Below, piece after piece: positions 12,862 through 56,835 of a stretch of DNA of 64,000 nucleotides. The notes under the pieces are model-generated. The model made no database searches. It saw only the letters and a list, made by a program, of their open reading frames with translations, and had not been told where the DNA came from. A program made the translations under genes and the position numbers. Position 1 is the first letter of the stretch; every line of letters begins with the position of its first letter. The DNA lies in IMG/VR virus record IMGVR_UViG_3300036781_000418, positions 186,001-250,000 of that record, one strand, 5' to 3'.

Positions 12862-12911
12862 ATCCTGACTAACTTGGTGTACGCGTAGCGTCGCCGAGTT
12901 AGAATGTACCT

Positions 12912-13205
12912 ACCATGTCGAAAGACACGGTGATTGTCGTAATTCGGCTTGAGTTGATGAGGGTAACACGGGGGTTCAACTCCCCCCAGCTCCACCAAAA
13001 GGGTTTACTGGAATCTTTCTGATGGGGCTGAACGGGTAATCGACTACGCTACTGAAATGATAGACGCGACATGCAAGGCGATCTGCACCGATGATGTTTG
13101 TCGGAAAGAAGCAAAATCTTTAAATGCTAACAACAGCGTTTACGCTCTCGCCGCTTAAAAACCGTGCGCAGCTGGGGCCGATCGCCTTATAATCCAAAGA
13201 TCACT
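12912..13205 (+). ncRNA. ssrA: circularly permuted (two-piece) tmRNA, tag ANNSVYALAA*
   Basis: T-arm plus CAGCTCCACCA (ends 12997) lies upstream of the GGGGCTG 5' end (13024); G3-U70 pair; resume codon GCT at 13126 after TAAAT; TAA at 13156-13158; outer ends approximate. Confidence 0.92.
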
Positions 13206-13229
13206 CAAGGGGCTTCGGCCCCTTGTTTT
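13206..13229 (+). terminator. intrinsic terminator of tmRNA
   Basis: CAAGGGGC-TTCG-GCCCCTTG-TTTT. Confidence 0.85.
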
Positions 13230-13303
13230 ATGCCCAGACCCAAACAATCTGTTGGCGTAAAACCGTAAATAGTCTATGATGCCTCCATTGGTCGAGGCAC
13301 CCC

Positions 13304-13792: not shown

Positions 13793-13869
13793 GACTCCAT
13801 AGCTCAGTTGGTTAGAGCAGCGGCCTTCAAAGCCGCCGGTCCTCGGTTCGAGCCCGAGTGGAGCCACCA
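13793..13869 (+). tRNA. tRNA with UCA anticodon (opal-reading), copy 1
   Basis: GACTCCA/TGGAGCC-ACCA acceptor; anticodon arm GCGGC-CTTCAAA-GCCGC; canonical D and T arms; short variable loop. Confidence 0.88.
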
Positions 13870-13928: not shown

Positions 13929-14005
13929 GCGCCCATAGCTCAGCGGTCCAGAGCAACTTGCTTCAAACTTGTTGGTCCTCGGTTCGAATCCGAGTGGGCG
14001 CACCA
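13929..14005 (+). tRNA. tRNA with UCA anticodon (opal-reading), copy 2
   Basis: GCGCCCA/TGGGCGC-ACCA; anticodon arm ACTTG-CTTCAAA-CTTGT with two U-U mismatches. Confidence 0.78.
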
Positions 14006-29809: not shown

Positions 29810-29957
29810 TTCATAAACCCAAGAGTTACCGCTTGCAATCGGTTATCTACTTTAACTTGGTGTAAAAACCCGGAGTGCGGTTCGAGTCCGCACAACGCCC
29901 ATACTGGCTTCGGGGGCAATCTCCGAGAGCTACTTTTGTTGCTCTTGGGTTTATGAA
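29810..29957 (+). ncRNA. Y-RNA-like element A
   Basis: 16 bp outer stem TTCATAAACCCAAGAG/CTCTTGGGTTTATGAA; TACCG-N9-GGTTATC; internal T-arm GTGCGG-TTCGAGT-CCGCAC. Confidence 0.65.
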
Positions 29958-29966
29958 TTTTTCTGT

Positions 29967-30052
29967 GTGGACATGACTGAGAGGCTGAAGGTGACGGGCT
30001 GTAACCCCGTTCTGTAAAAAGCGCGTAGGTTCGAATCCTACTGGCCACACCA
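29967..30052 (+). tRNA. tRNA-Tyr(GUA)
   Basis: ACGGG-CTGTAAC-CCCGT; long variable arm; CCA. Confidence 0.9.
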
Positions 30053-30061
30053 AGTTTAGAT

Positions 30062-30135
30062 GCGGGATTCGTATAGTGGTATTACCTCAGCCTTCCAAGC
30101 TGATGATGAGGGTTCGATTCCCTTATCCCGCTCCA
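30062..30135 (+). tRNA. tRNA-Gly(UCC)
   Basis: TCAGC-CTTCCAA-GCTGA; U73-CCA. Confidence 0.93.
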
Positions 30136-30150
30136 CATTAAGAGGCTTGA

Positions 30151-30618
30151 ATGGCTAGAGGAAGAATTGAAGTCTCACGTGAGCAACTCCTCCAAGCAAT
30201 TGAATCGACAGATTCTGCCGTTCAAGCTTCTAAGCAGTTAGGATTGATGTACACCACGTTTATTCGCAGGTGTAAAGAGCATCAACTATATGCTCCAAAT
30301 CAAGGTGGTAAAGGAACTCAAAAACCTCGACCACAGATGAAAATCGCTCTTGAGGATATCTTCAACGGTAAACATTTGATGGATTCAAAAGCCATTAAAC
30401 GGAAACTGTTTGAAGCAGGTCTTAAGAAAGAAGAATGCGAGTGTTGTGGAATAGGTCCAGTGTGGAATGGCAAGAAGCTTACGCTTCAGCTTGACCACAT
30501 TGATGGAGATCGAACTCACAATGCTTTTGAGAATCTGAGAATTCTCTGCCCTAACTGTCACACTCAGACAGCCACATTTAGTAAGGGTAAAAATAGGACA
30601 CATGCGTCTGTGGCGTAA
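30151..30618 (+). CDS. HNH endonuclease (free-standing, homing-type)
   Basis: CECCG..LQLDHIDGDRTHNAFENLRILCPNCHTQT; AT-rich; stop lies inside the downstream tRNA-Leu. Confidence 0.9.
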   Translation: MARGRIEVSREQLLQAIESTDSAVQASKQLGLMYTTFIRRCKEHQLYAPNQGGKGTQKPRPQMKIALEDIFNGKHLMDSKAIKRKLFEAGLKKEECECCGIGPVWNGKKLTLQLDHIDGDRTHNAFENLRILCPNCHTQTATFSKGKNRTHASVA

Positions 30619-30689
30619 TTGGTAGCCGCGCTAGGTTGAGGGCCTAGTCCTATAATGGGGTGCAGGTTCGAGTCCTGTCAGACGCACCA
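30604..30689 (+). tRNA. tRNA-Leu(GAG)
   Basis: CTAGG-TTGAGGG-CCTAG; long variable arm; ACCA. Confidence 0.9.
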
Positions 30690-30696
30690 TGTTTTT

Positions 30697-30771
30697 GGGG
30701 GAGTACCTCAGTGTTAGAGGGCCCGCTTTTTAAGCGGAAAGTCGAAGGTTCAACTCCTTCCTCCCCCACCA
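30697..30771 (+). tRNA. tRNA-Lys(UUU)
   Basis: CCCGC-TTTTTAA-GCGGA; ACCA. Confidence 0.85.
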
Positions 30772-30775
30772 GTTT

Positions 30776-30891
30776 GAGAACCGTCGTTGATTGGTTATCG
30801 GAAAAGTCAGGGGTGCTTAAACCCCAGGATGAGCATGGTTCAAGCCCGTGCACCCTCGCAAGAGGTTTTACCGATCTGCATTTTTGTTCTC
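30776..30891 (+). ncRNA. Y-RNA-like element B
   Basis: GAGAAC/GTTCTC outer stem; AACCG-N9-GGTTATC; internal T-arm-like GCATGG-TTCAAGC-CCGTGC. Confidence 0.6.
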
Positions 30892-30901
30892 TCCGTTTTC
30901 C

Positions 30902-30996
30902 GACGAACCGTCGTCGAAGGGTTATCTAGTTCACGACTAAAGGGCGCGTATGTGTCCGGCTGCAGAAGCCATCACCCTTCACATCATTTGTTTGTC
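30902..30996 (+). ncRNA. Y-RNA-like element C
   Basis: GACGAAC/GTTTGTC and GAAGGGT/ACCCTTC stems enclosing three small hairpins; AACCG-N9-GGTTATC. Confidence 0.65.
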
Positions 30997-31000
30997 ACTT

Positions 31001-31075
31001 GGGCTTCTAGTATAGGGGGAATTACTACTGTCTTGCACGCAGTGAATCGGGGTTCGAGTCCCCGGAGGTCCACCA
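31001..31075 (+). tRNA. tRNA-Ala(UGC)
   Basis: ACTGT-CTTGCAC-GCAGT; G3-U70; ACCA. Confidence 0.9.
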
Positions 31076-31084
31076 AGTTTTAAT

Positions 31085-31161
31085 CGGAGTGTAGCGCAGT
31101 CTGGTAGCGCATCTGCTTTGGGAGCAGAGGGTCCCAGGTTCGAATCCTGGTACTCCGACCA
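31085..31161 (+). tRNA. tRNA-Pro(UGG)
   Basis: CGGAGTG; TCTGC-TTTGGGA-GCAGA; ACCA. Confidence 0.95.
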
Positions 31162-31221
31162 CGTTTTCGCACGGCACGGATGACCGTTATCATCCACACT
31201 ACTACGACTACAAGGAACTAA

Positions 31222-31509
31222 ATGGTACACGTAAAGATCATGTCCGGTGAGGACACGCACGATTCTTACCCAGGTAAGAACTACACGCTGATCACAGTCA
31301 ATGACCGAGATCGGATTCAGTTCGGCGAATGGGGTTCGCTCTTCGGTAACCCAGCCAACACAGCTGACGATCGCGGTGGAAACACCGAGGTGATGATCGT
31401 GATTCGCGAGAAGAGTTCAGAGCAGGAGACGTACCCGCTGTTGGGGAACGTCTACATCATGAACGATCAAGGTAAGACGATTGCGACTCGCCAGAAGAGC
31501 ATCAATTAA
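31222..31509 (+). CDS. hypothetical protein
   Basis: AAGGA RBS; 95 aa between tRNAs. Confidence 0.65.
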   Translation: MVHVKIMSGEDTHDSYPGKNYTLITVNDRDRIQFGEWGSLFGNPANTADDRGGNTEVMIVIREKSSEQETYPLLGNVYIMNDQGKTIATRQKSIN

Positions 31510-31516
31510 GAACAAC

Positions 31517-31624
31517 GCGGACGTAGCTCAGTTGGATTAGAGCTCGGCACACAAAACAAAGGCGGCCGGCTTGCCGATCAGTAGTGTGACGCGGTCAGAG
31601 GTTCGAGCCCTCTCGTACGCACCA
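31517..31624 (+). ncRNA. tRNA-like RNA with an expanded anticodon loop
   Basis: Normal acceptor, D and T arms with ACCA; CACAC/GTGTG stem closes a ~31 nt loop with no 7-nt anticodon loop. Confidence 0.7.
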
Positions 31625-31806
31625 AACGCGGACTCTCCCTGCTCACAGCGCTCGGAACGCCCATACAACCCATGGAAGAGCTCCTAGCTAGTACCTAGAG
31701 GCGGACTTTCGGCATCACTTAAAAACTGGTGCGGTTGGTGGTTAGCTTGTATGGTGCTCCCTGAGTAAAGAGGACCCGACCGGACAAGTCGCAAAACTGT
31801 TCCGAT

Positions 31807-31882
31807 GCAGGGGTAGCTCAGTTGGTAGAGTACTTGTTTGCCAAGCAAGACGTCGCGGGTTCGAACCCCGTTCCCTGCTCCA
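31807..31882 (+). tRNA. tRNA-Gly(GCC)
   Basis: CTTGT-TTGCCAA-GCAAG; TCCA. Confidence 0.93.
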
Positions 31883-31888
31883 AATTTT

Positions 31889-31978
31889 GGACACTTGGCC
31901 GAGAGGCTTAAGGCACCGGTCTTGAAAACCGACGGGCCCTTACGGGTCCCGTGAGTTCGAATCTCACAGTGTCCGCCA
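31889..31978 (+). tRNA. tRNA-Ser(UGA)
   Basis: CCGGT-CTTGAAA-ACCGA; long variable arm; GCCA. Confidence 0.92.
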
Positions 31979-31983
31979 GAACA

Positions 31984-32045
31984 TAGCAACCGCACGTGCA
32001 GGGTTATCATCCATTCGCTCTCCCTGTACAACCTCTTTGTTGCTA
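31984..32045 (+). ncRNA. minimal Y-RNA-like element D
   Basis: TAGCAAC/GTTGCTA and GTGCAGGG/CCCTGTAC stems; pyrimidine-rich loop; AACCG-N9-GGTTATC. Confidence 0.65.
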
Positions 32046-32056
32046 GTATTTCAGTT

Positions 32057-32180
32057 AGGGATGTCGTCCAGTGGTAGGACAGCCGCCTCAACGTCGTGAA
32101 TGACATCTTTAGTTGCGCAAGTAACCGCCGCTTCATGGTTATCCAAGCAGCTTACGTGGGTTCGATCCCCACCATCCCTA
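32057..32180 (+). ncRNA. tRNA (Gly-like) with the Y-type stem inserted in the anticodon loop
   Basis: AGGGATG/CATCCCT; D and T arms intact; ~53 nt insert AAC..CTTTAGTTGC-GCAA-GTAACCG-N9-GGTTAT. Confidence 0.7.
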
Positions 32181-32224
32181 ACCCCTTGACTTCAAGGGAA
32201 AGTATCCATTGGGTTCTTTCCTTT

Positions 32225-32354
32225 GGGGTCGTAGTGTAGTGGACAGCACGTTAACATCGATTGCTCCCTTTGTTGGACTTTGAATCCAACCGCTCGTGAT
32301 TGGTTATCTTTCTACAAAAAGACAGGATGGGTTCGAATCCCATCGACTCCACCA
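32225..32354 (+). ncRNA. tRNA-like RNA (G3-U70, ACCA) with the Y-type stem inserted 5' of the anticodon arm
   Basis: GGGGTCG/CGACTCC-ACCA; insert TAAC..CTTTGTTGGA-CTTTGAA-TCCAACCG-N9-GGTTA. Confidence 0.7.
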
Positions 32355-32367
32355 AAATTCTTTCCAT

Positions 32368-32496
32368 GCAGTCTTGGCGTAACGGTAGCGCGCGAACAGT
32401 CGTTCGCATCTTTAGTTGTCGCAAGGCAACCGTTCGTGAATGGTTATCTAAAGTACAAAGACGAGGTCCGTGGTTCAATTCCCGGGGACTGCACCA
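32368..32496 (+). ncRNA. tRNA-like RNA (ACCA) with the Y-type stem inserted in the anticodon stem
   Basis: GCAGTCT/GGACTGC-ACCA; insert AAC..CTTTAGTTGTC-GCAA-GGCAACCG-N9-GGTTA. Confidence 0.7.
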
Positions 32497-35528: not shown

Positions 35529-35614
35529 GCGACTGTGGCGTAATTGGTAGCCGCGCAACGCTCAGAACGTTGTGGTCCTAGACCGTGGAGGTTCGAGTCC
35601 TCTCAGTCGCACCA
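35529..35614 (+). tRNA. tRNA-Leu(CAG)
   Basis: CAACG-CTCAGAA-CGTTG; ACCA. Confidence 0.92.
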
Positions 35615-35623
35615 TTGATCAAT

Positions 35624-35711
35624 AGCGGGGTAGAGCGTAGTTTGGTAGCGTGTTGGGCTCATAACCCAGCGTCGTAAGACCCCGGAGGTTCGAGTCCTCC
35701 TCCCGCAACCA
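35624..35711 (+). tRNA. initiator-like tRNA-fMet(CAU) with an extra arm
   Basis: 1:72 mismatch; GGG/CCC anticodon stem; CTCATAA loop; variable hairpin GTC-GTAA-GAC. Confidence 0.75.
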
Positions 35712-35718
35712 CAACAAT

Positions 35719-35844
35719 GGTCCAATAGTGTAGTAGCACGATCAACAAAAGCACATCATCATGGCGGTAGCCAAGCCTAGGAGAGCGCATCTCCCACTGA
35801 TGAAGGAGCAGGTGGAGAATCGGGACTCCTGCGTTGGATCACCA
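35719..35844 (+). ncRNA. tRNA-like RNA with a large structured central insertion
   Basis: GGTCCAA/TTGGATC-ACCA; short D arm; TCATCA/TGATGA stem; GCAGG/CCTGC T-stem with an oversized loop. Confidence 0.55.
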
Positions 35845-35849
35845 GAATT

Positions 35850-36014
35850 AAGCAACCGATAGATAACGGTTATCAGAAAGTAGCGTCGAAAGACTTGTGG
35901 GTTCGAGTCCCACCTGAGAGTCACCTAAGACGTGATGGTTTGTACTCAGTGGCGGAATTGGTAAACGCACAACTCCGGCCGCAAGGCCATCTCCGTGTCG
36001 CTCCTTTGTTGCTT
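35850..36014 (+). ncRNA. YrlA-like Y RNA (circularly permuted tRNA-Leu-like module)
   Basis: AAGCAAC/GTTGCTT outer stem; AACCG-N9-GGTTATC; then T-arm, loop-closed acceptor stem CTGAG/CTCAG, D-arm TGGCGGAATTGGTAAACGC. Confidence 0.75.
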
Positions 36015-36038
36015 TTCATAAACTAGAGGAACTTTCCC

Positions 36039-36485
36039 ATGTCAACCAAGTATGAACTCCACGTCACCACGTGGGAGTGTGATGCTGATCATCACTTGAC
36101 CAAGATTCTCGAGAATCTTAGCCGTGACGACGTTACCGCGTTCGTTGAACTGGCCAAGAAGTTCGCCTCAACACACGCCACACCACCGGGCGTCGGCAAC
36201 CACAGTGTGGCCGACGACGTGCTCGTTGAGGCGGTCCAGTCGGTGCTGACAAAGTACCCAGACGCTTACTATCTTCAGCTGCTCTTTGAACAAGACGCAC
36301 CTAAAGATTACCAAGGTGACATCAGCCTTGCTGACTTTTACTGGCAGGCCCTATGCGAGTCGCTGTTGGACTATCCAGTGATCGAGCCGTACCAAGACGA
36401 GTACCACTTTTGCCGCGTCTACTGCGTCCACAAGGTCTATGAAGTCCCAGTCGCGAAGGTCGACGTCACGGAGTGTTTCCAATGA
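36039..36485 (+). CDS. hypothetical protein
   Basis: GAGGA RBS. Confidence 0.7.
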   Translation: MSTKYELHVTTWECDADHHLTKILENLSRDDVTAFVELAKKFASTHATPPGVGNHSVADDVLVEAVQSVLTKYPDAYYLQLLFEQDAPKDYQGDISLADFYWQALCESLLDYPVIEPYQDEYHFCRVYCVHKVYEVPVAKVDVTECFQ

Positions 36486-55731: not shown

Positions 55732-56835
55732 ATGGAACGATACCTGGTCGGCGGTGCAGTCCGCGACGCGCTGATGAACGTGACACCAAAAGACCGTGAC
55801 TGGGTCCTTGTCGGCGCTACGCAGCAGGACATTGACGACATGGTCAAGGAAGGGTACCAGTGGGTTGGTGCCGACTTCCCCGTGCTGATCCACCCAAAAA
55901 CGAAAGAGGAGCACGCCCTCGCCCGAGTCGAACGTAAAGTCGGCCATGGCTACAACGGCTTTGAGGTGGACACGGAGGGCGTCACCCTCGAGCAGGACCT
56001 GGCACGTCGCGACCTGACCATCAACGCGATGGCTTGGGACACGAGCCCATCGATGGTGTACGAAGACGACATCATCGACCCGTACGGCGGTCGCAATGAC
56101 ATCAAGCACAAGATCATCCGTCACACGACGATGGCCTTCGTTGAAGATCCGCTCCGAGCCCTGCGTGTCGCGCGCTTCGCCGCCCGCCTCAGCTTCAGCG
56201 TCCACCCCACCACACACGACCTCATCAAGCACATGGGAACGTCCGGTGAACTGGAACACCTGACCGACGAACGTGTCTGGGCCGAGGTGAAGAAGGGCCT
56301 AAGCGGTCCGCACCCCACCGTCTTCATGTACCAGCTCTACAACCTCGGCATCATCAAGCACTGCGCAGTACTGCGTGAGGTCTTTCCATGGACCTACGAG
56401 TTCGTCGCCTACGGCGTGACGAAGTACCTGCGCATGGTCAAGGAGGAAGATCGCTTCGAACTGGGCCTGGCCTGCATGATGGCGTGTGGTGACGTTGAAA
56501 AGATCAAGGCCATTCCGTCCAGGACGAAGAAGGTCTACAACAACATCGGCTACCTGAACGAGATCCATGACTGGTCAAACGTGGCGGCCGACAAGTTGGT
56601 GACGGTCATCACGAAGATCGGCGGCCTACGTGAAGGCACGATGTTTGACGACATCGTCACCTGCCTCCAGCTGACGAAGCCAACGCAGATCGAGATCATC
56701 GACATCTTGACGGCCAGCCGCATGGTGATGCAGCAAGTTCGAGCCGACCAGTTCCCAGACCTTGAAGGCCAAGCGCTCGGGGCCGCGATGATCCAAGAAC
56801 GTGCGAAGCGCGTTGCTGAGCTGTTGTTACAATAA
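55732..56835 (+). CDS. cca: tRNA nucleotidyltransferase (CCA-adding enzyme)
   Basis: [53 protein letters not shown]. Confidence 0.93.

What the first reader, a model, noticed from the sequence alone, without database searches (positions are those of the whole stretch)
35850..36014. Circularly permuted tRNA-Leu-like RNA (T-arm, closed acceptor stem, then D-arm)
Seen: after GGTTATC come a variable-arm hairpin, T-arm GTGGG-TTCGAGT-CCCAC, a CTGAG/CTCAG stem closed by a 26-nt loop, then a Leu-type D-arm. This is the order described for YrlA and is the strongest single support for the Y RNA reading.
Basis: partly seen in the sequence, partly recalled or inferred. Interest (0 to 1): 0.7.

Follow-up and report, generated by a model that had tools for sequence, protein, structure and literature searches.

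The report
Phage Y RNA with permuted tRNA-Leu body
This 165-base stretch of a 343-kb soil jumbo phage is very probably a YrlA-type Y RNA, a small RNA that binds the phage's Ro60 protein through a bulged stem and carries a tRNA-shaped domain whose parts come in circularly permuted order; this kind of RNA is already known, but this copy is an unusual variant.

Summary
At window 35850-36014 (+) lie a T arm, a CTGAG/CTCAG stem closed by a 26-nt loop, and a tRNA-Leu-type D arm, in that order.

The two ends pair into a 7-bp stem followed by a bulged C and G·U/A-U pairs, then GGTTATC. This is the layout of a Ro60-binding Y RNA helix.

I built a covariance model (R1) from 20 phage YrlA-like RNAs, including the published mycobacteriophage ET08 YrlA. 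In 80 actinobacterial rsr loci, all 146 R1 hits lie on rsr's strand, the strong ones just upstream of the gene. R1 ranks this element first in the whole 342.6-kb genome: 48.2 bits, E about 1e-10, full length.

The genome encodes a complete Ro60 (TROVE plus vWA), but 72 kb away. About ten related elements in other viral contigs keep every helix through compensatory changes.

Verdict: a real YrlA-class Y RNA. It is a variant because it has a class II Leu-type tRNA body, an extra hairpin and an AAC[C]G core, sits in a tRNA array unlinked to rsr, and scores far below Rfam's YrlA threshold.

It is one of nine Y-RNA modules in this genome. Three of them have ordinary tRNA topology: open 7-bp acceptor, NCC(A) tail, and the Ro-binding stem in place of the anticodon loop. 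I found no description of that form.

No expression or binding data exist.

The parts
35850..35856 (+). P1 5' strand (AAGCAAC) of the terminal Y RNA stem
   Evidence: Pairs with 36008-36014. The equivalent columns covary across the family: 8 of 11 pairs in this helix show changes on both sides.
35857..35859 (+). Bulged C, then G and A that pair with U36007 and U36006: the Ro60-binding core C[C]GA / UUG
   Evidence: In alignment A4 the core C-G pair is kept in 27/27 sequences, G·U in 26/27 and A-U in 18/27. It corresponds to the GNCGAA motif of Chen 2014, but with A in place of the first G.
35862..35869 (+). P2 5' strand (GATAACGG, one bulged A)
   Evidence: Pairs with CCGTGTC at 35993-35999. 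Relatives show compensatory changes, for example GACGTTGG/CCGATGTC and GATGATGG/CCGTTGTC, each 8/8.
35870..35874 (+). UUAUC (the YUAY motif), part of the invariant GGTTATC
   Evidence: Invariant in alignments A1, A2 and A5. YUAY is described as conserved at the start of the V region of YrlA.
35879..35883 (+). Anticodon-stem equivalent, 3'-side strand (AGTAG)
   Evidence: Pairs with CAACT at 35970-35974 in 4 of 5 positions (one A·A). Relatives have ACCGG/CTGGT, ACTGG/CTAGT and ACGGG/CCCGT at 5/5.
35884..35896 (+). Long variable arm with hairpin GTC-GAAA-GAC, ending in U48
   Evidence: Read from the sequence. ARAGORN draws it as a class II variable arm in the rejoined construct.
35897..35913 (+). 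T arm GTGGG-TTCGAGT-CCCAC
   Evidence: The T stem covaries in the family, with 99% of cells paired.
35914..35949 (+). Closed acceptor-like stem: CTGAG / CTCAG around a 26-nt loop that can add an inner GTCAC/GTGAT helix
   Evidence: All 6 pairs of the equivalent helix covary. Close relatives close this stem with GNRA tetraloops (sequences).
35950..35969 (+). U8-G9, D arm GCG-GAATTGGTAAA-CGC (3-bp stem, class II/Leu type), then A26
   Evidence: The best matches in the genome are the four tRNA-Leu genes. The D arm TGGCGRAAYYGGTARACGC is shared by about ten related elements.
35970..35974 (+). Anticodon-stem equivalent, 5'-side strand (CAACT)
35977..35988 (+). Extra hairpin GGCC-GCAA-GGCC at the junction where a tRNA would have its anticodon loop
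   Evidence: The same hairpin position holds CCC-GCAA-GGG, CCC-GAAA-GGG and GCC-GCAA-GGC in L058, L156 and L159.
35993..35999 (+). P2 3' strand (CCGTGTC)
36006..36014 (+). 3' strand of the core (UU) and of P1 (GTTGCTT)
32057..32496 (+). Three tandem paralogous Y-RNA modules in ordinary tRNA topology: E5 32057-32183, E6 32225-32354, E7 32368-32496
   Evidence: R1 also hits across their junctions at 42-43 bits, but with P1 mismatched.
29810..32044 (+). Four further Y-stem modules with their ends at the Y stem and no D arm: E1 29810-29957, E2 30773-30891, E3 30902-30996, E4 31985-32044
   Evidence: They give weak R1 hits.

Best explanation
Window 35850-36014 (+) encodes a YrlA-class Y RNA of a jumbo phage.

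Shown by sequence and comparison:
- The 5' and 3' ends pair into a stem. It runs P1, a bulged C, G·U and A-U pairs, an internal loop, then P2. This matches the Ro60-binding helix of Y RNAs.
- The stem carries a tRNA-like domain whose parts run in permuted order: anticodon-stem 3' strand, long variable arm, T arm, a closed acceptor-like stem, U8-G9, a tRNA-Leu-type D arm, then anticodon-stem 5' strand.
- The nucleotides needed for the tRNA elbow and core are all present: U8/A14, A15/U48, G18G19 facing U55C56, and U54/A58.

Inferred:
- The RNA is cut out of the long tRNA-array transcript.
- Its stem binds the phage's own Ro60 (Rsr; TROVE plus vWA; genome 293610-295322).
- Its tRNA-shaped end recruits a tRNA-elbow-binding partner or an exonuclease such as host PNPase. 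This follows the Ro60-Y RNA-PNPase complexes of Deinococcus and Salmonella and of Thermus phage phiLo.
- The particle therefore acts in RNA quality control or repair during infection, alongside the phage's tRNAs, CCA-adding-like enzyme and two Rnl2-type ligases.
For: 1. Anatomy read directly from the sequence; all 45 proposed pairs are standard pairs.
2. R1 was built only from other phages' YrlA-like RNAs, including the published ET08 YrlA. It hits this element full length at 48.2 bits, E 1.2e-10, the best hit in the window and in the 342.6-kb genome.
3. R1 is a genuine YrlA detector. In 80 actinobacterial rsr loci all 146 hits lie on the rsr strand, and the strong ones lie just upstream of rsr at up to 96 bits. 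They include Gordonia polyisoprenivorans, a species named in Chen 2014. Rfam's RF02553 YrlA model picks the same Gordonia interval.
4. The genome encodes a full Ro60: TROVE 7.7e-27 and vWA_Ro60 1e-48.
5. All 7 near-complete related jumbo records that carry the AACCG...GGTTATC module also encode TROVE. In the cultured-phage collection only 362 of 50,697 records do.
6. Family covariation: 92% of cells are paired, 21 of 26 pairs have changes on both sides, and the covariation score is 0.58 against 0.17 for shuffles and 0.09-0.13 for slid partners.
7. In the Leu-type subgroup the AC stem and P2 also change in a compensatory way.
8. The rejoined halves fold as a class II cloverleaf, and the D half is closest to tRNA-Leu genes.
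9. Phage Ro60-Y RNA pairs and their PNPase complex are documented.
Against: - There is no RNA evidence. Only DNA runs hold the sequence, so expression, ends, modifications and Ro60 binding are all untested.
- Rfam RF02553 gives only 18 bits, E 0.16, over the T-to-D core, against a gathering score of 69. At a wider window it gives nothing.
- The gene lies 72 kb from rsr. Chen et al. 2014 (PMC4201824) found YrlA within 4 kb.
- The D and T stem sequences, reported as nearly invariant in YrlA, differ here, and the first G of GNCGAA is an A.
- Thermodynamic folding alone does not single out the model: z = -0.17 for the wider region, and the model energy is -37.4 against an MFE of -49.4 kcal/mol.
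- AACC and GGTT could instead pair locally, as RNAalifold proposed. Both are invariant, so covariation cannot decide between the two.
- The co-occurrence with Ro60 is partly phylogenetic, because the carriers are related phages.
Confidence: 0.82

Rival explanations
1. It is a tRNA-like structured RNA that works without Ro60. It might serve as a processing signal in the tRNA-array transcript, or as a decoy for host enzymes or defence nucleases that recognise the tRNA elbow. On this view the Y-RNA-like stem is only a closing helix.
For: - The gene is unlinked to rsr and sits among about 25 tRNA genes.
- Rfam's YrlA model barely sees it.
- The partner of the YrlA tRNA-like domain is unknown even for the type member.
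Against: - The stem is not a generic helix. The C[C]GA/UUG core and GGTTATC are invariant, while the pairs around them covary.
- The same core occurs in rsr-adjacent YrlA of bacteria and of phage ET08.
- All near-complete carriers encode Ro60.
Confidence: 0.1
2. It is the decayed remnant of two neighbouring tRNA genes, the 3' half of one and the 5' half of a tRNA-Leu, with no function of its own.
For: - The D half resembles the tRNA-Leu(CAG) gene about 320 nt upstream. The V arm resembles that of the tRNA(CAU) gene about 140 nt upstream.
- Other odd tRNA-like pieces lie nearby.
Against: - The acceptor strands are complementary to each other, and the outer ends pair.
- About ten relatives in other contigs keep all helices through compensatory changes, and several close the acceptor-like stem with GNRA tetraloops.
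- The D arm is closer to those relatives than to the phage's own tRNA-Leu genes.
Confidence: 0.04
3. It is a circularly permuted tRNA gene, as in the red alga Cyanidioschyzon merolae. The transcript would be circularised and re-opened to yield a working tRNA-Leu.
For: - The 3' half precedes the 5' half and their acceptor strands are complementary.
- The phage has two RNA ligases and a CCA-adding-like enzyme.
- The rejoined halves look like a class II tRNA.
Against: - No anticodon loop exists or could be formed. The anticodon-stem equivalent opens into a hairpin plus P2/P1, not a 7-nt loop.
- The acceptor has only 5 Watson-Crick pairs and no CCA.
- Relatives seal it with tetraloops, which leaves no processing site.
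- The 'Leu(cag)' label comes from a loop I borrowed from another gene.
Confidence: 0.03

Closest known systems
YrlA (Y RNA-like A; Rfam RF02553; Chen et al. 2014 PMC4201824; structure Wang et al. 2018, bioRxiv 312249, PDB 6CU1)
   Same: - The ends pair into a Ro60/Rsr-binding stem with a bulged-C core.
- A YUAY motif, a variable region, a T arm, a closed acceptor-like stem-loop and a D arm follow in that order.
- The tertiary-pair nucleotides of tRNA are kept.
- A Ro60 gene lies in the same genome, on the same strand.
   Different: - The tRNA body is class II and Leu-type: a 3-bp D stem with an 11-nt loop and a 13-nt variable arm.
- The D and T stem sequences are not the near-invariant YrlA ones.
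- An extra GNRA hairpin sits at the junction.
- The core reads AAC[C]GA rather than GNCGAA.
- The gene is 72 kb from rsr, inside a tRNA array.
- It scores 18 bits against the gathering score of 69 with RF02553.
Mycobacteriophage ET08 YrlA and its neighbouring Y-like RNAs, upstream of Ro gene gp220
   Same: - Phage-encoded.
- CCG-N9-10-GGTTAYC on the 5' strand.
- The order T arm, closed stem, D arm.
- A small hairpin after the D arm.
- More than one Y-like RNA per genome.
   Different: - In ET08 the RNAs lie directly upstream of Ro. The D arm is the canonical GCTCAGTGGTAGAGC.
- Here there are nine modules, spread over tRNA arrays.
Thermus phage phiLo Yrl1/Yrl2 with phage Ro60 and host PNPase (PMC12135203)
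   Same: A phage Ro60 plus phage-encoded Y-like RNAs. This is the model for the inferred mechanism, in which the RNA tethers Ro60 to an exonuclease.
   Different: The phiLo RNAs were found next to the Ro60 gene by a CGAA motif. That paper reports no tRNA-like domain for them. Nothing about binding has been tested here.
Circularly permuted tRNA genes of Cyanidioschyzon merolae (recalled from memory, not checked here)
   Same: The 3' half of the tRNA is encoded upstream of the 5' half, and the acceptor strands are joined by a linker.
   Different: Those genes mature into decoding tRNAs with an anticodon loop and a CCA end. This element has neither.
Permuted (two-piece) tmRNA
   Same: It is another tRNA-like RNA whose gene is circularly permuted. 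This same phage encodes one at window 12886-13249.
   Different: tmRNA has an open, aminoacylatable acceptor and a tag reading frame, and it works with SmpB on ribosomes. It has no Ro60-binding stem.

Membership tests
YrlA / bacterial Y RNA | A Ro60 (TROVE) ortholog is encoded in the same genome | tested here: met
   A 570-aa ORF at genome 293610-295322 (+) matches TROVE at 7.7e-27 and vWA_Ro60 at 1e-48.
YrlA / bacterial Y RNA | The RNA gene lies within about 4 kb of rsr on the same strand (Chen 2014) | tested here: not met
   The strand is the same but the distance is about 72 kb. No R1 hit lies near rsr. Related jumbo phages show the same separation of 13-165 kb.
YrlA / bacterial Y RNA | The 5' and 3' ends pair into a stem carrying the GNCGAA(N0-1)G / bulged-helix Ro-binding motif | tested here: inconclusive
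   The stem and the C[C]GA / UUG core are present, and the core is invariant across the family. The first G of the motif is an A, giving AACCGAU. Binding itself is untested.
YrlA / bacterial Y RNA | A conserved YUAY motif at the start of the variable region | tested here: met
   UUAU lies within the invariant GGTTATC at 35868-35874.
YrlA / bacterial Y RNA | The order T arm, closed acceptor-like stem-loop, D arm | tested here: met
   T arm at 35897-35913, closed stem at 35914-35949, D arm at 35952-35968. The equivalent helices covary.
YrlA / bacterial Y RNA | The nucleotides for tRNA tertiary pairs are kept (U8:A14, R15:Y48, G18:U55, G19:C56, U54:A58) | tested here: met
   Read from the sequence: U35950/A35956, A35957/U35896, G35960 and G35961 facing U35903 and C35904, and U35902/A35906. 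The fold itself was not probed.
YrlA / bacterial Y RNA | Near-invariant D-stem and T-stem sequences of YrlA (Wang 2018) | tested here: not met
   The D arm is tRNA-Leu type rather than GCUCAGUGGUAGAGC as in ET08 and most of alignment A2. The T stem is GUGGG/CCCAC.
YrlA / bacterial Y RNA | Reaches the gathering score (69 bits) of Rfam RF02553 | tested here: not met
   It scores 18 bits, E 0.16, on model positions 29-81 only. Accepted YrlAs also fail this cut-off: ET08 scores 37.4 bits and Gordonia 45.2 bits. The cut-off is therefore narrow.
YrlA / bacterial Y RNA | A significant full-length match to an independent YrlA covariance model that finds rsr-adjacent YrlA | tested here: met
   R1 gives 48.2 bits, E 1.2e-10, over model positions 1-137. 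In 80 rsr loci R1 gave 146 hits, all on rsr's strand, the strong ones just upstream of rsr.
YrlA / bacterial Y RNA | Bound by Rsr in vivo; pseudouridine 55 and dihydrouridine present | not testable with these tools
   No RNA runs hold the sequence. The complex-prediction job was not folded.
Permuted tRNA gene (functional tRNA after re-joining) | A 7-nt anticodon loop can be reconstituted, with a 7-bp acceptor and a CCA or processing site | tested here: not met
   There is no anticodon loop. The acceptor has 5 Watson-Crick pairs and no CCA, and relatives close it with tetraloops.

The most novel reading that the evidence does not exclude
This phage and a group of related Ro60-encoding jumbo phages carry a whole repertoire of Y RNA / tRNA chimeras in both circular permutations.

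- One form is the YrlA form, with its ends at the Ro-binding stem and a closed acceptor, like this finding.
- The other form appears undescribed and has ordinary tRNA topology: an open 7-bp acceptor, a discriminator plus CC(A) tail, D and T arms, and the Ro60-binding stem capped by a loop where the anticodon loop should be.

Tandem arrays of the tRNA-shaped form read across their junctions as YrlA. That points to duplication and truncation as the route by which YrlA arose, and it bears on the proposal that YrlA came from dimeric tRNA transcripts.

The tRNA-shaped Y RNAs could be CCA-tailed, or even charged. They might bring Ro60 to tRNA-handling machinery.
Probability: 0.55. Interest if true: 0.75.

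Novelty: new variant of a known kind. Interest (0 to 1): 0.55.

Why it matters
Y RNAs tether Ro60 to effectors, but two questions about the tRNA-like YrlA class remain open: what its tRNA-shaped end binds, and how the class arose.

- **A separate subfamily.** This element shows that the Y stem can carry a different tRNA body, class II and Leu-type, and can sit among tRNA genes far from rsr. Surveys restricted to the rsr neighbourhood, or run with the current Rfam model, will therefore miss such genes.
- **The origin question.** The same genome holds the permuted and the non-permuted arrangement side by side. The origin of YrlA can therefore be studied by comparison.
- **Natural variants for experiments.** The two forms, one with a closed acceptor and one with an open acceptor and CCA tail, can be used to test what the tRNA-like end does.
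- **Phage biology.** It adds a multi-RNA Ro60 system to the tRNA, tmRNA, ligase and CCA-enzyme toolkit of jumbo phages.

Tried and rejected
**Searches that gave nothing or too little**
- Rfam at gathering thresholds gave only tRNAs and tmRNA in the window. With E <= 10 over 35650-36100 it gave only noise. Only a 186-nt query brought up RF02553, at 18 bits.
- blastn of the region against 50,697 phage records found no match.
- A search for relatives of the downstream 148-aa ORF in viral contigs found none. Pfam finds nothing in that ORF.
- The search for sequencing runs found two DNA metagenomes and no RNA, so I did not use read laying.
- The complex-prediction job for Ro60 plus the RNA was counted but not folded. 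It is no evidence either way.
- Single-sequence MFE folding is uninformative: z = -0.17.
- The promoter and terminator scans were at background level.
- Two reviews by the Wolin group are not in the library.

**Ideas considered and dropped**
- A hammerhead ribozyme, suggested by a CUGAUGA at 35796-35802. There is no GAAA after the second stem and no Rfam hit.
- GTCGAAAG in the V arm as the GNCGAAN0-1G motif. It is not conserved in relatives (L058 and L255 differ), so it is a coincidence.
- The Y modules inside E5-E7 as tRNA introns. ARAGORN with introns allowed does call Gly(ccc) with a 53-nt intron and Thr(cgt) with a 38-nt intron. But the sites are non-canonical. In most family members only 4-6 nt separate the D arm from P2, so no anticodon loop can be rebuilt.
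- The YqeY-like gene directly upstream of rsr as the conserved partner. The adjacency is not kept in relatives.
- The local AACC/GGTT hairpin proposed by RNAalifold. I judged it less likely, because covarying P1 stacks directly on AAC/GTT and P2 covaries. Both segments are invariant, so it is not excluded.

Full report
**Setting.** The window is bases 186001-250000 of a 342,591-bp viral record with direct terminal repeats. The sequence comes from a soil metagenome. The record is a jumbo phage with 40 tRNA genes called by ARAGORN and a permuted tmRNA. The finding lies at the end of one tRNA array. A tRNA-Leu(CAG) gene lies at 35529-35614, a tRNA(CAU) gene at 35624-35711, and an odd tRNA-like piece at 35719-35844. 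A 148-aa ORF starts at 36039.

**The observation.**
- GGTTATC at 35868-35874.
- A GTC-GAAA-GAC hairpin at 35885-35894.
- T arm GTGGG-TTCGAGT-CCCAC at 35897-35913.
- CTGAG at 35914-35918 pairing with CTCAG at 35945-35949 over a 26-nt loop.
- U8-G9, then D arm GCG-GAATTGGTAAA-CGC at 35952-35968.

Among all tRNA genes of the genome, the four best matches to the D half are the four tRNA-Leu genes. When I rejoined the two halves in normal order with a borrowed anticodon loop, ARAGORN drew a class II cloverleaf with a 3-bp D stem and a long variable arm. The anticodon label in that output means nothing, because the loop was borrowed.

**The full anatomy.**
- AAGCAAC (35850-35856) pairs with GTTGCTT (36008-36014).
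- C35857 is bulged. G35858 and A35859 pair with U36007 and U36006.
- After a small internal loop, GATAACGG (35862-35869, one bulged A) pairs with CCGTGTC (35993-35999).
- UUAUC follows. A 5-position anticodon-stem equivalent, AGTAG/CAACT with one A·A, then connects to the tRNA-like core.
- An extra GGCC-GCAA-GGCC hairpin (35977-35988) sits where the anticodon loop would be.

All 45 proposed pairs are standard pairs. This is the YrlA layout as described by Chen et al. 2014 and solved by Wang et al. 2018: a Ro60-binding stem formed by the ends, a YUAY motif, then V, T, a closed acceptor-like stem and D. Those authors already call YrlA a circularly permuted tRNA with a closed acceptor. They also note that many YrlAs have class II-like variable loops.

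**Known phage reference.** Mycobacteriophage ET08 is named in Chen 2014, and I located its YrlA upstream of its Ro gene. It reads CAGG-C-CGA, nine bases, GGTTACC, V region, T arm, a 6-bp closed stem, TA, D arm, a small hairpin, then CCATG plus the 3' strand. The element here is parallel module for module.

**Test against YrlA.**
- Pattern scans of IMG/VR returned more than 50 elements with CCG-N8-11-GGTTAYC followed by a T arm. Their flanks pair into a terminal stem.
- I aligned 20 of these, including ET08 and none from this genome. I annotated only the helices that pair in nearly all rows, and built model R1.
- To check that R1 really detects YrlA, I fetched 80 actinobacterial rsr loci. R1 gave 146 hits there. 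All are on the rsr strand, and the strong ones lie just upstream of rsr at up to 96 bits.
- The Gordonia polyisoprenivorans hit, at 93 bits, coincides with the interval that Rfam's RF02553 YrlA model picks.
- In the window R1's best hit is exactly 35848-36016: full length, 48.2 bits, E 1.2e-10. It is also the best hit in the whole genome, and nothing lies near rsr.

**Rfam's own model is less kind.** RF02553 gives 18 bits (E 0.16) on the T-to-D core, and only when the query is cut to 186 nt. The same model gives 37.4 bits to ET08's published YrlA and 45.2 bits to Gordonia's, against a gathering score of 69. The curated cut-off therefore excludes accepted members as well. I record this membership criterion as not met, while noting how narrow it is.

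**Ro60.** A 570-aa ORF at genome 293610-295322, on the same strand, has TROVE and the Ro60 vWA domain. It is about 37% identical to the Ro proteins of mycobacteriophages. It lies 72 kb downstream of the RNA. All seven near-complete related jumbo records (331-417 kb) that carry the AACCG...GGTTATC module also encode TROVE. The three carriers that lack it are fragments estimated at 12-16% complete. Among cultured phages only 362 of 50,697 records match. In the relatives the R1 hits again lie 13-165 kb from rsr on the same strand. Separation from rsr is therefore typical of this phage group, and it departs from the 4-kb rule of Chen 2014.

**Comparative support.** About ten elements in other viral contigs share the Leu-type D arm TGGCGRAAYYGGTARACGC after a T arm and a closed stem. 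The closest, L159:984-1129, has nearly the same P1, P2 and hairpin.
- Across R1-aligned family members 92% of cells pair and 21 of 26 pairs change on both sides. The covariation score is 0.58, against 0.17 for shuffles and 0.09-0.13 for slid partners. The core C-G, G·U and A-U pairs next to the bulged C do not vary.
- In the Leu-type group the anticodon-stem equivalent reads CAACT/AGTAG, CTGGT/ACCGG, CTAGT/ACTGG or CCCGT/ACGGG. P2 reads GACGTTGG/CCGATGTC, GATGATGG/CCGTTGTC or ATTGATGG/TCGTCAGT.
- The acceptor-like stem differs completely between relatives and is often capped by a GNRA tetraloop. That argues against cleavage of this loop as a conserved step. A few G-type members (for example L111:6021-6167) instead have a 7-bp stem followed by ACCA, like the RNase P-cleaved M. 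smegmatis YrlA.
- In the present element, which has 5 Watson-Crick pairs and a 26-nt loop with a possible inner helix, cleavage cannot be predicted.

**Mechanism.**
- Shown: the sequence architecture, its conservation, its co-occurrence with Ro60, and its recognition by a validated YrlA model.
- Inferred from the family: the stem binds the outer face of the Ro60 ring, and the tRNA-like end recruits a partner.
- Documented partners in other systems are PNPase in Deinococcus and Salmonella, and host PNPase with the phage Ro60 of Thermus phage phiLo. Wang et al. predict a protein that binds the tRNA elbow.
- The phage also encodes a CCA-adding-like nucleotidyltransferase and two Rnl2-type RNA ligases but no RtcB. 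This fits a role in RNA surveillance or repair during infection, but does not prove it.
- No promoter or terminator stands out. The RNA is probably processed from the array transcript. The upstream tRNA-like piece ends with ACCA five bases before P1.

**The wider family in this genome.** GGTTATC preceded by (A)ACCG and a spacer of 9-11 bases occurs nine times, all in tRNA arrays.
- Five copies have their ends at the Y stem but lack a D arm: E1, E2 and E3; E4 in the window; and E9 at genome 255474-255540. E1 and E2 keep a T arm. E4 and E9 are hairpins of 60-65 nt with pyrimidine-rich loops, reminiscent of YrlB-type RNAs.
- Three copies in tandem, E5 to E7 at 32057-32496, have ordinary tRNA topology. 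Each has a 7-bp acceptor, D arm, a 9-bp P2, the UUG/C[C]G core, P1 closed by a loop, UUAUC, a variable region, T arm, the acceptor 3' strand and NCC(A).
- Fifteen such elements from this and other contigs align cleanly. The acceptor pairs in 100% of cells, with six of seven pairs covarying. P2 is 95% paired with five compensatory pairs. The covariation score is 0.55 against 0.17.
- R1 also hits across the E5/E6 and E6/E7 junctions at 42-43 bits, but with P1 and the acceptor mismatched. The tRNA-shaped elements therefore contain every YrlA module, with the break point moved from P1 to the acceptor.
- A tandem array of this form, read from one P1 loop to the next, is a YrlA. This bears on the proposal that YrlA arose from dimeric tRNA transcripts.
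- I found no description of the tRNA-shaped form in the held literature. Two relevant reviews could not be read.

**Rivals.**
- A decayed pair of tRNA fragments is contradicted by the covariation and by the paired ends.
- A permuted gene for a working tRNA-Leu is contradicted by the lack of any anticodon loop, CCA or processing site.
- A Ro60-independent tRNA mimic remains possible at about 10%, because binding is untested and the gene is unlinked to rsr.
- A protein-coding reading (the 60-aa minus-strand ORF at 35742-35924) has nothing in its favour, and the helix-preserving changes in relatives are those of a structured RNA.

**Verdict.** The element is a YrlA-class Y RNA of a distinct, Leu-type, rsr-unlinked subfamily, found in Ro60-encoding jumbo phages. 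As a single gene it is a variant of a known kind. The more surprising result is its context: nine Y modules, in both circular permutations.

Noticed in passing
window 32057-32183, 32225-32354, 32368-32496: Three tandem tRNA-shaped RNAs. Each has an open 7-bp acceptor, D and T arms and an NCC(A) tail, and the anticodon loop is replaced by a Ro60-binding-type stem (UUG / C[C]G core, GGTTATC) capped by a loop. Fifteen such elements from this and other jumbo-phage contigs covary strongly. This looks like YrlA in non-permuted topology. I found no description of it.
   Followed up: partly
window 29810-29957, 30773-30891, 30902-30996, 31985-32044; genome 255474-255540: Five more Y-stem modules with their ends at the stem and no D arm. 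Two keep a T arm. Two are hairpins of 60-65 nt with pyrimidine-rich loops. They are possibly YrlB-like partners of the same Ro60.
   Followed up: partly
window 35719-35844: An odd tRNA-like RNA of 126 nt. It has a 7-bp acceptor (GGTCCAA/TTGGATC) followed by ACCA and a short D-like arm, but no canonical T loop or anticodon arm, and about 90 nt of other structure including CUGAUGA. It has no Rfam match and ends 5 nt before the Y RNA.
   Followed up: no
window 31517-31624: A tRNA-like gene of 108 nt with an enlarged anticodon region that lacks the Y motif. Rfam's tRNA model gives 38 bits. ARAGORN calls it only when an intron is allowed.
   Followed up: no
window 12886-13249: A circularly permuted (two-piece type) tmRNA gene with tag ANNSVYALAA. 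Rfam gives beta_tmRNA 113.9 bits and tmRNA_permuted 105.8 bits. It is a second permuted tRNA-like RNA in the same phage, and it hints at a proteobacterial host.
   Followed up: no
window 13793-13869 and 13929-14005: Two tandem 77-nt tRNAs with anticodon UCA, which ARAGORN labels SeC. They may be UGA-reading suppressor tRNAs. I did not examine stop-codon usage in the genome.
   Followed up: no
window 35624-35711: The tRNA(CAU) gene is 88 nt long with a long variable arm, which is unusual for Met/Ile. Its variable arm, AGCGTCGTAAGAC, is nearly the same as that of the Y RNA, AGCGTCGAAAGAC. This suggests local exchange between the two genes.
   Followed up: no
window 55741-56121; genome 262917-263378 and 177577-178140: A CCA-adding-enzyme-like nucleotidyltransferase (PolyA_pol domain, 74.7 bits) lies in the window. 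Two Rnl2-type RNA ligase genes lie outside it. No RtcB was found.
   Followed up: partly
genome 292956-293396 (locus L257:3957-4397), outside the window: A 146-aa YqeY-like protein (a GatB-tail type domain, linked to tRNA binding) is encoded directly upstream of the Ro60 gene. Three of five related phages have such a gene, but not next to rsr.
   Followed up: partly
locus L111:6021-6167 (another viral contig): A Leu-type YrlA-like element. Its acceptor-like stem is a perfect 7 bp followed by ACCA and a 5-nt linker. It looks like the 3' and 5' ends of a single tRNA-Leu joined head to tail, and it may be an RNase P substrate like M. smegmatis YrlA.
   Followed up: no
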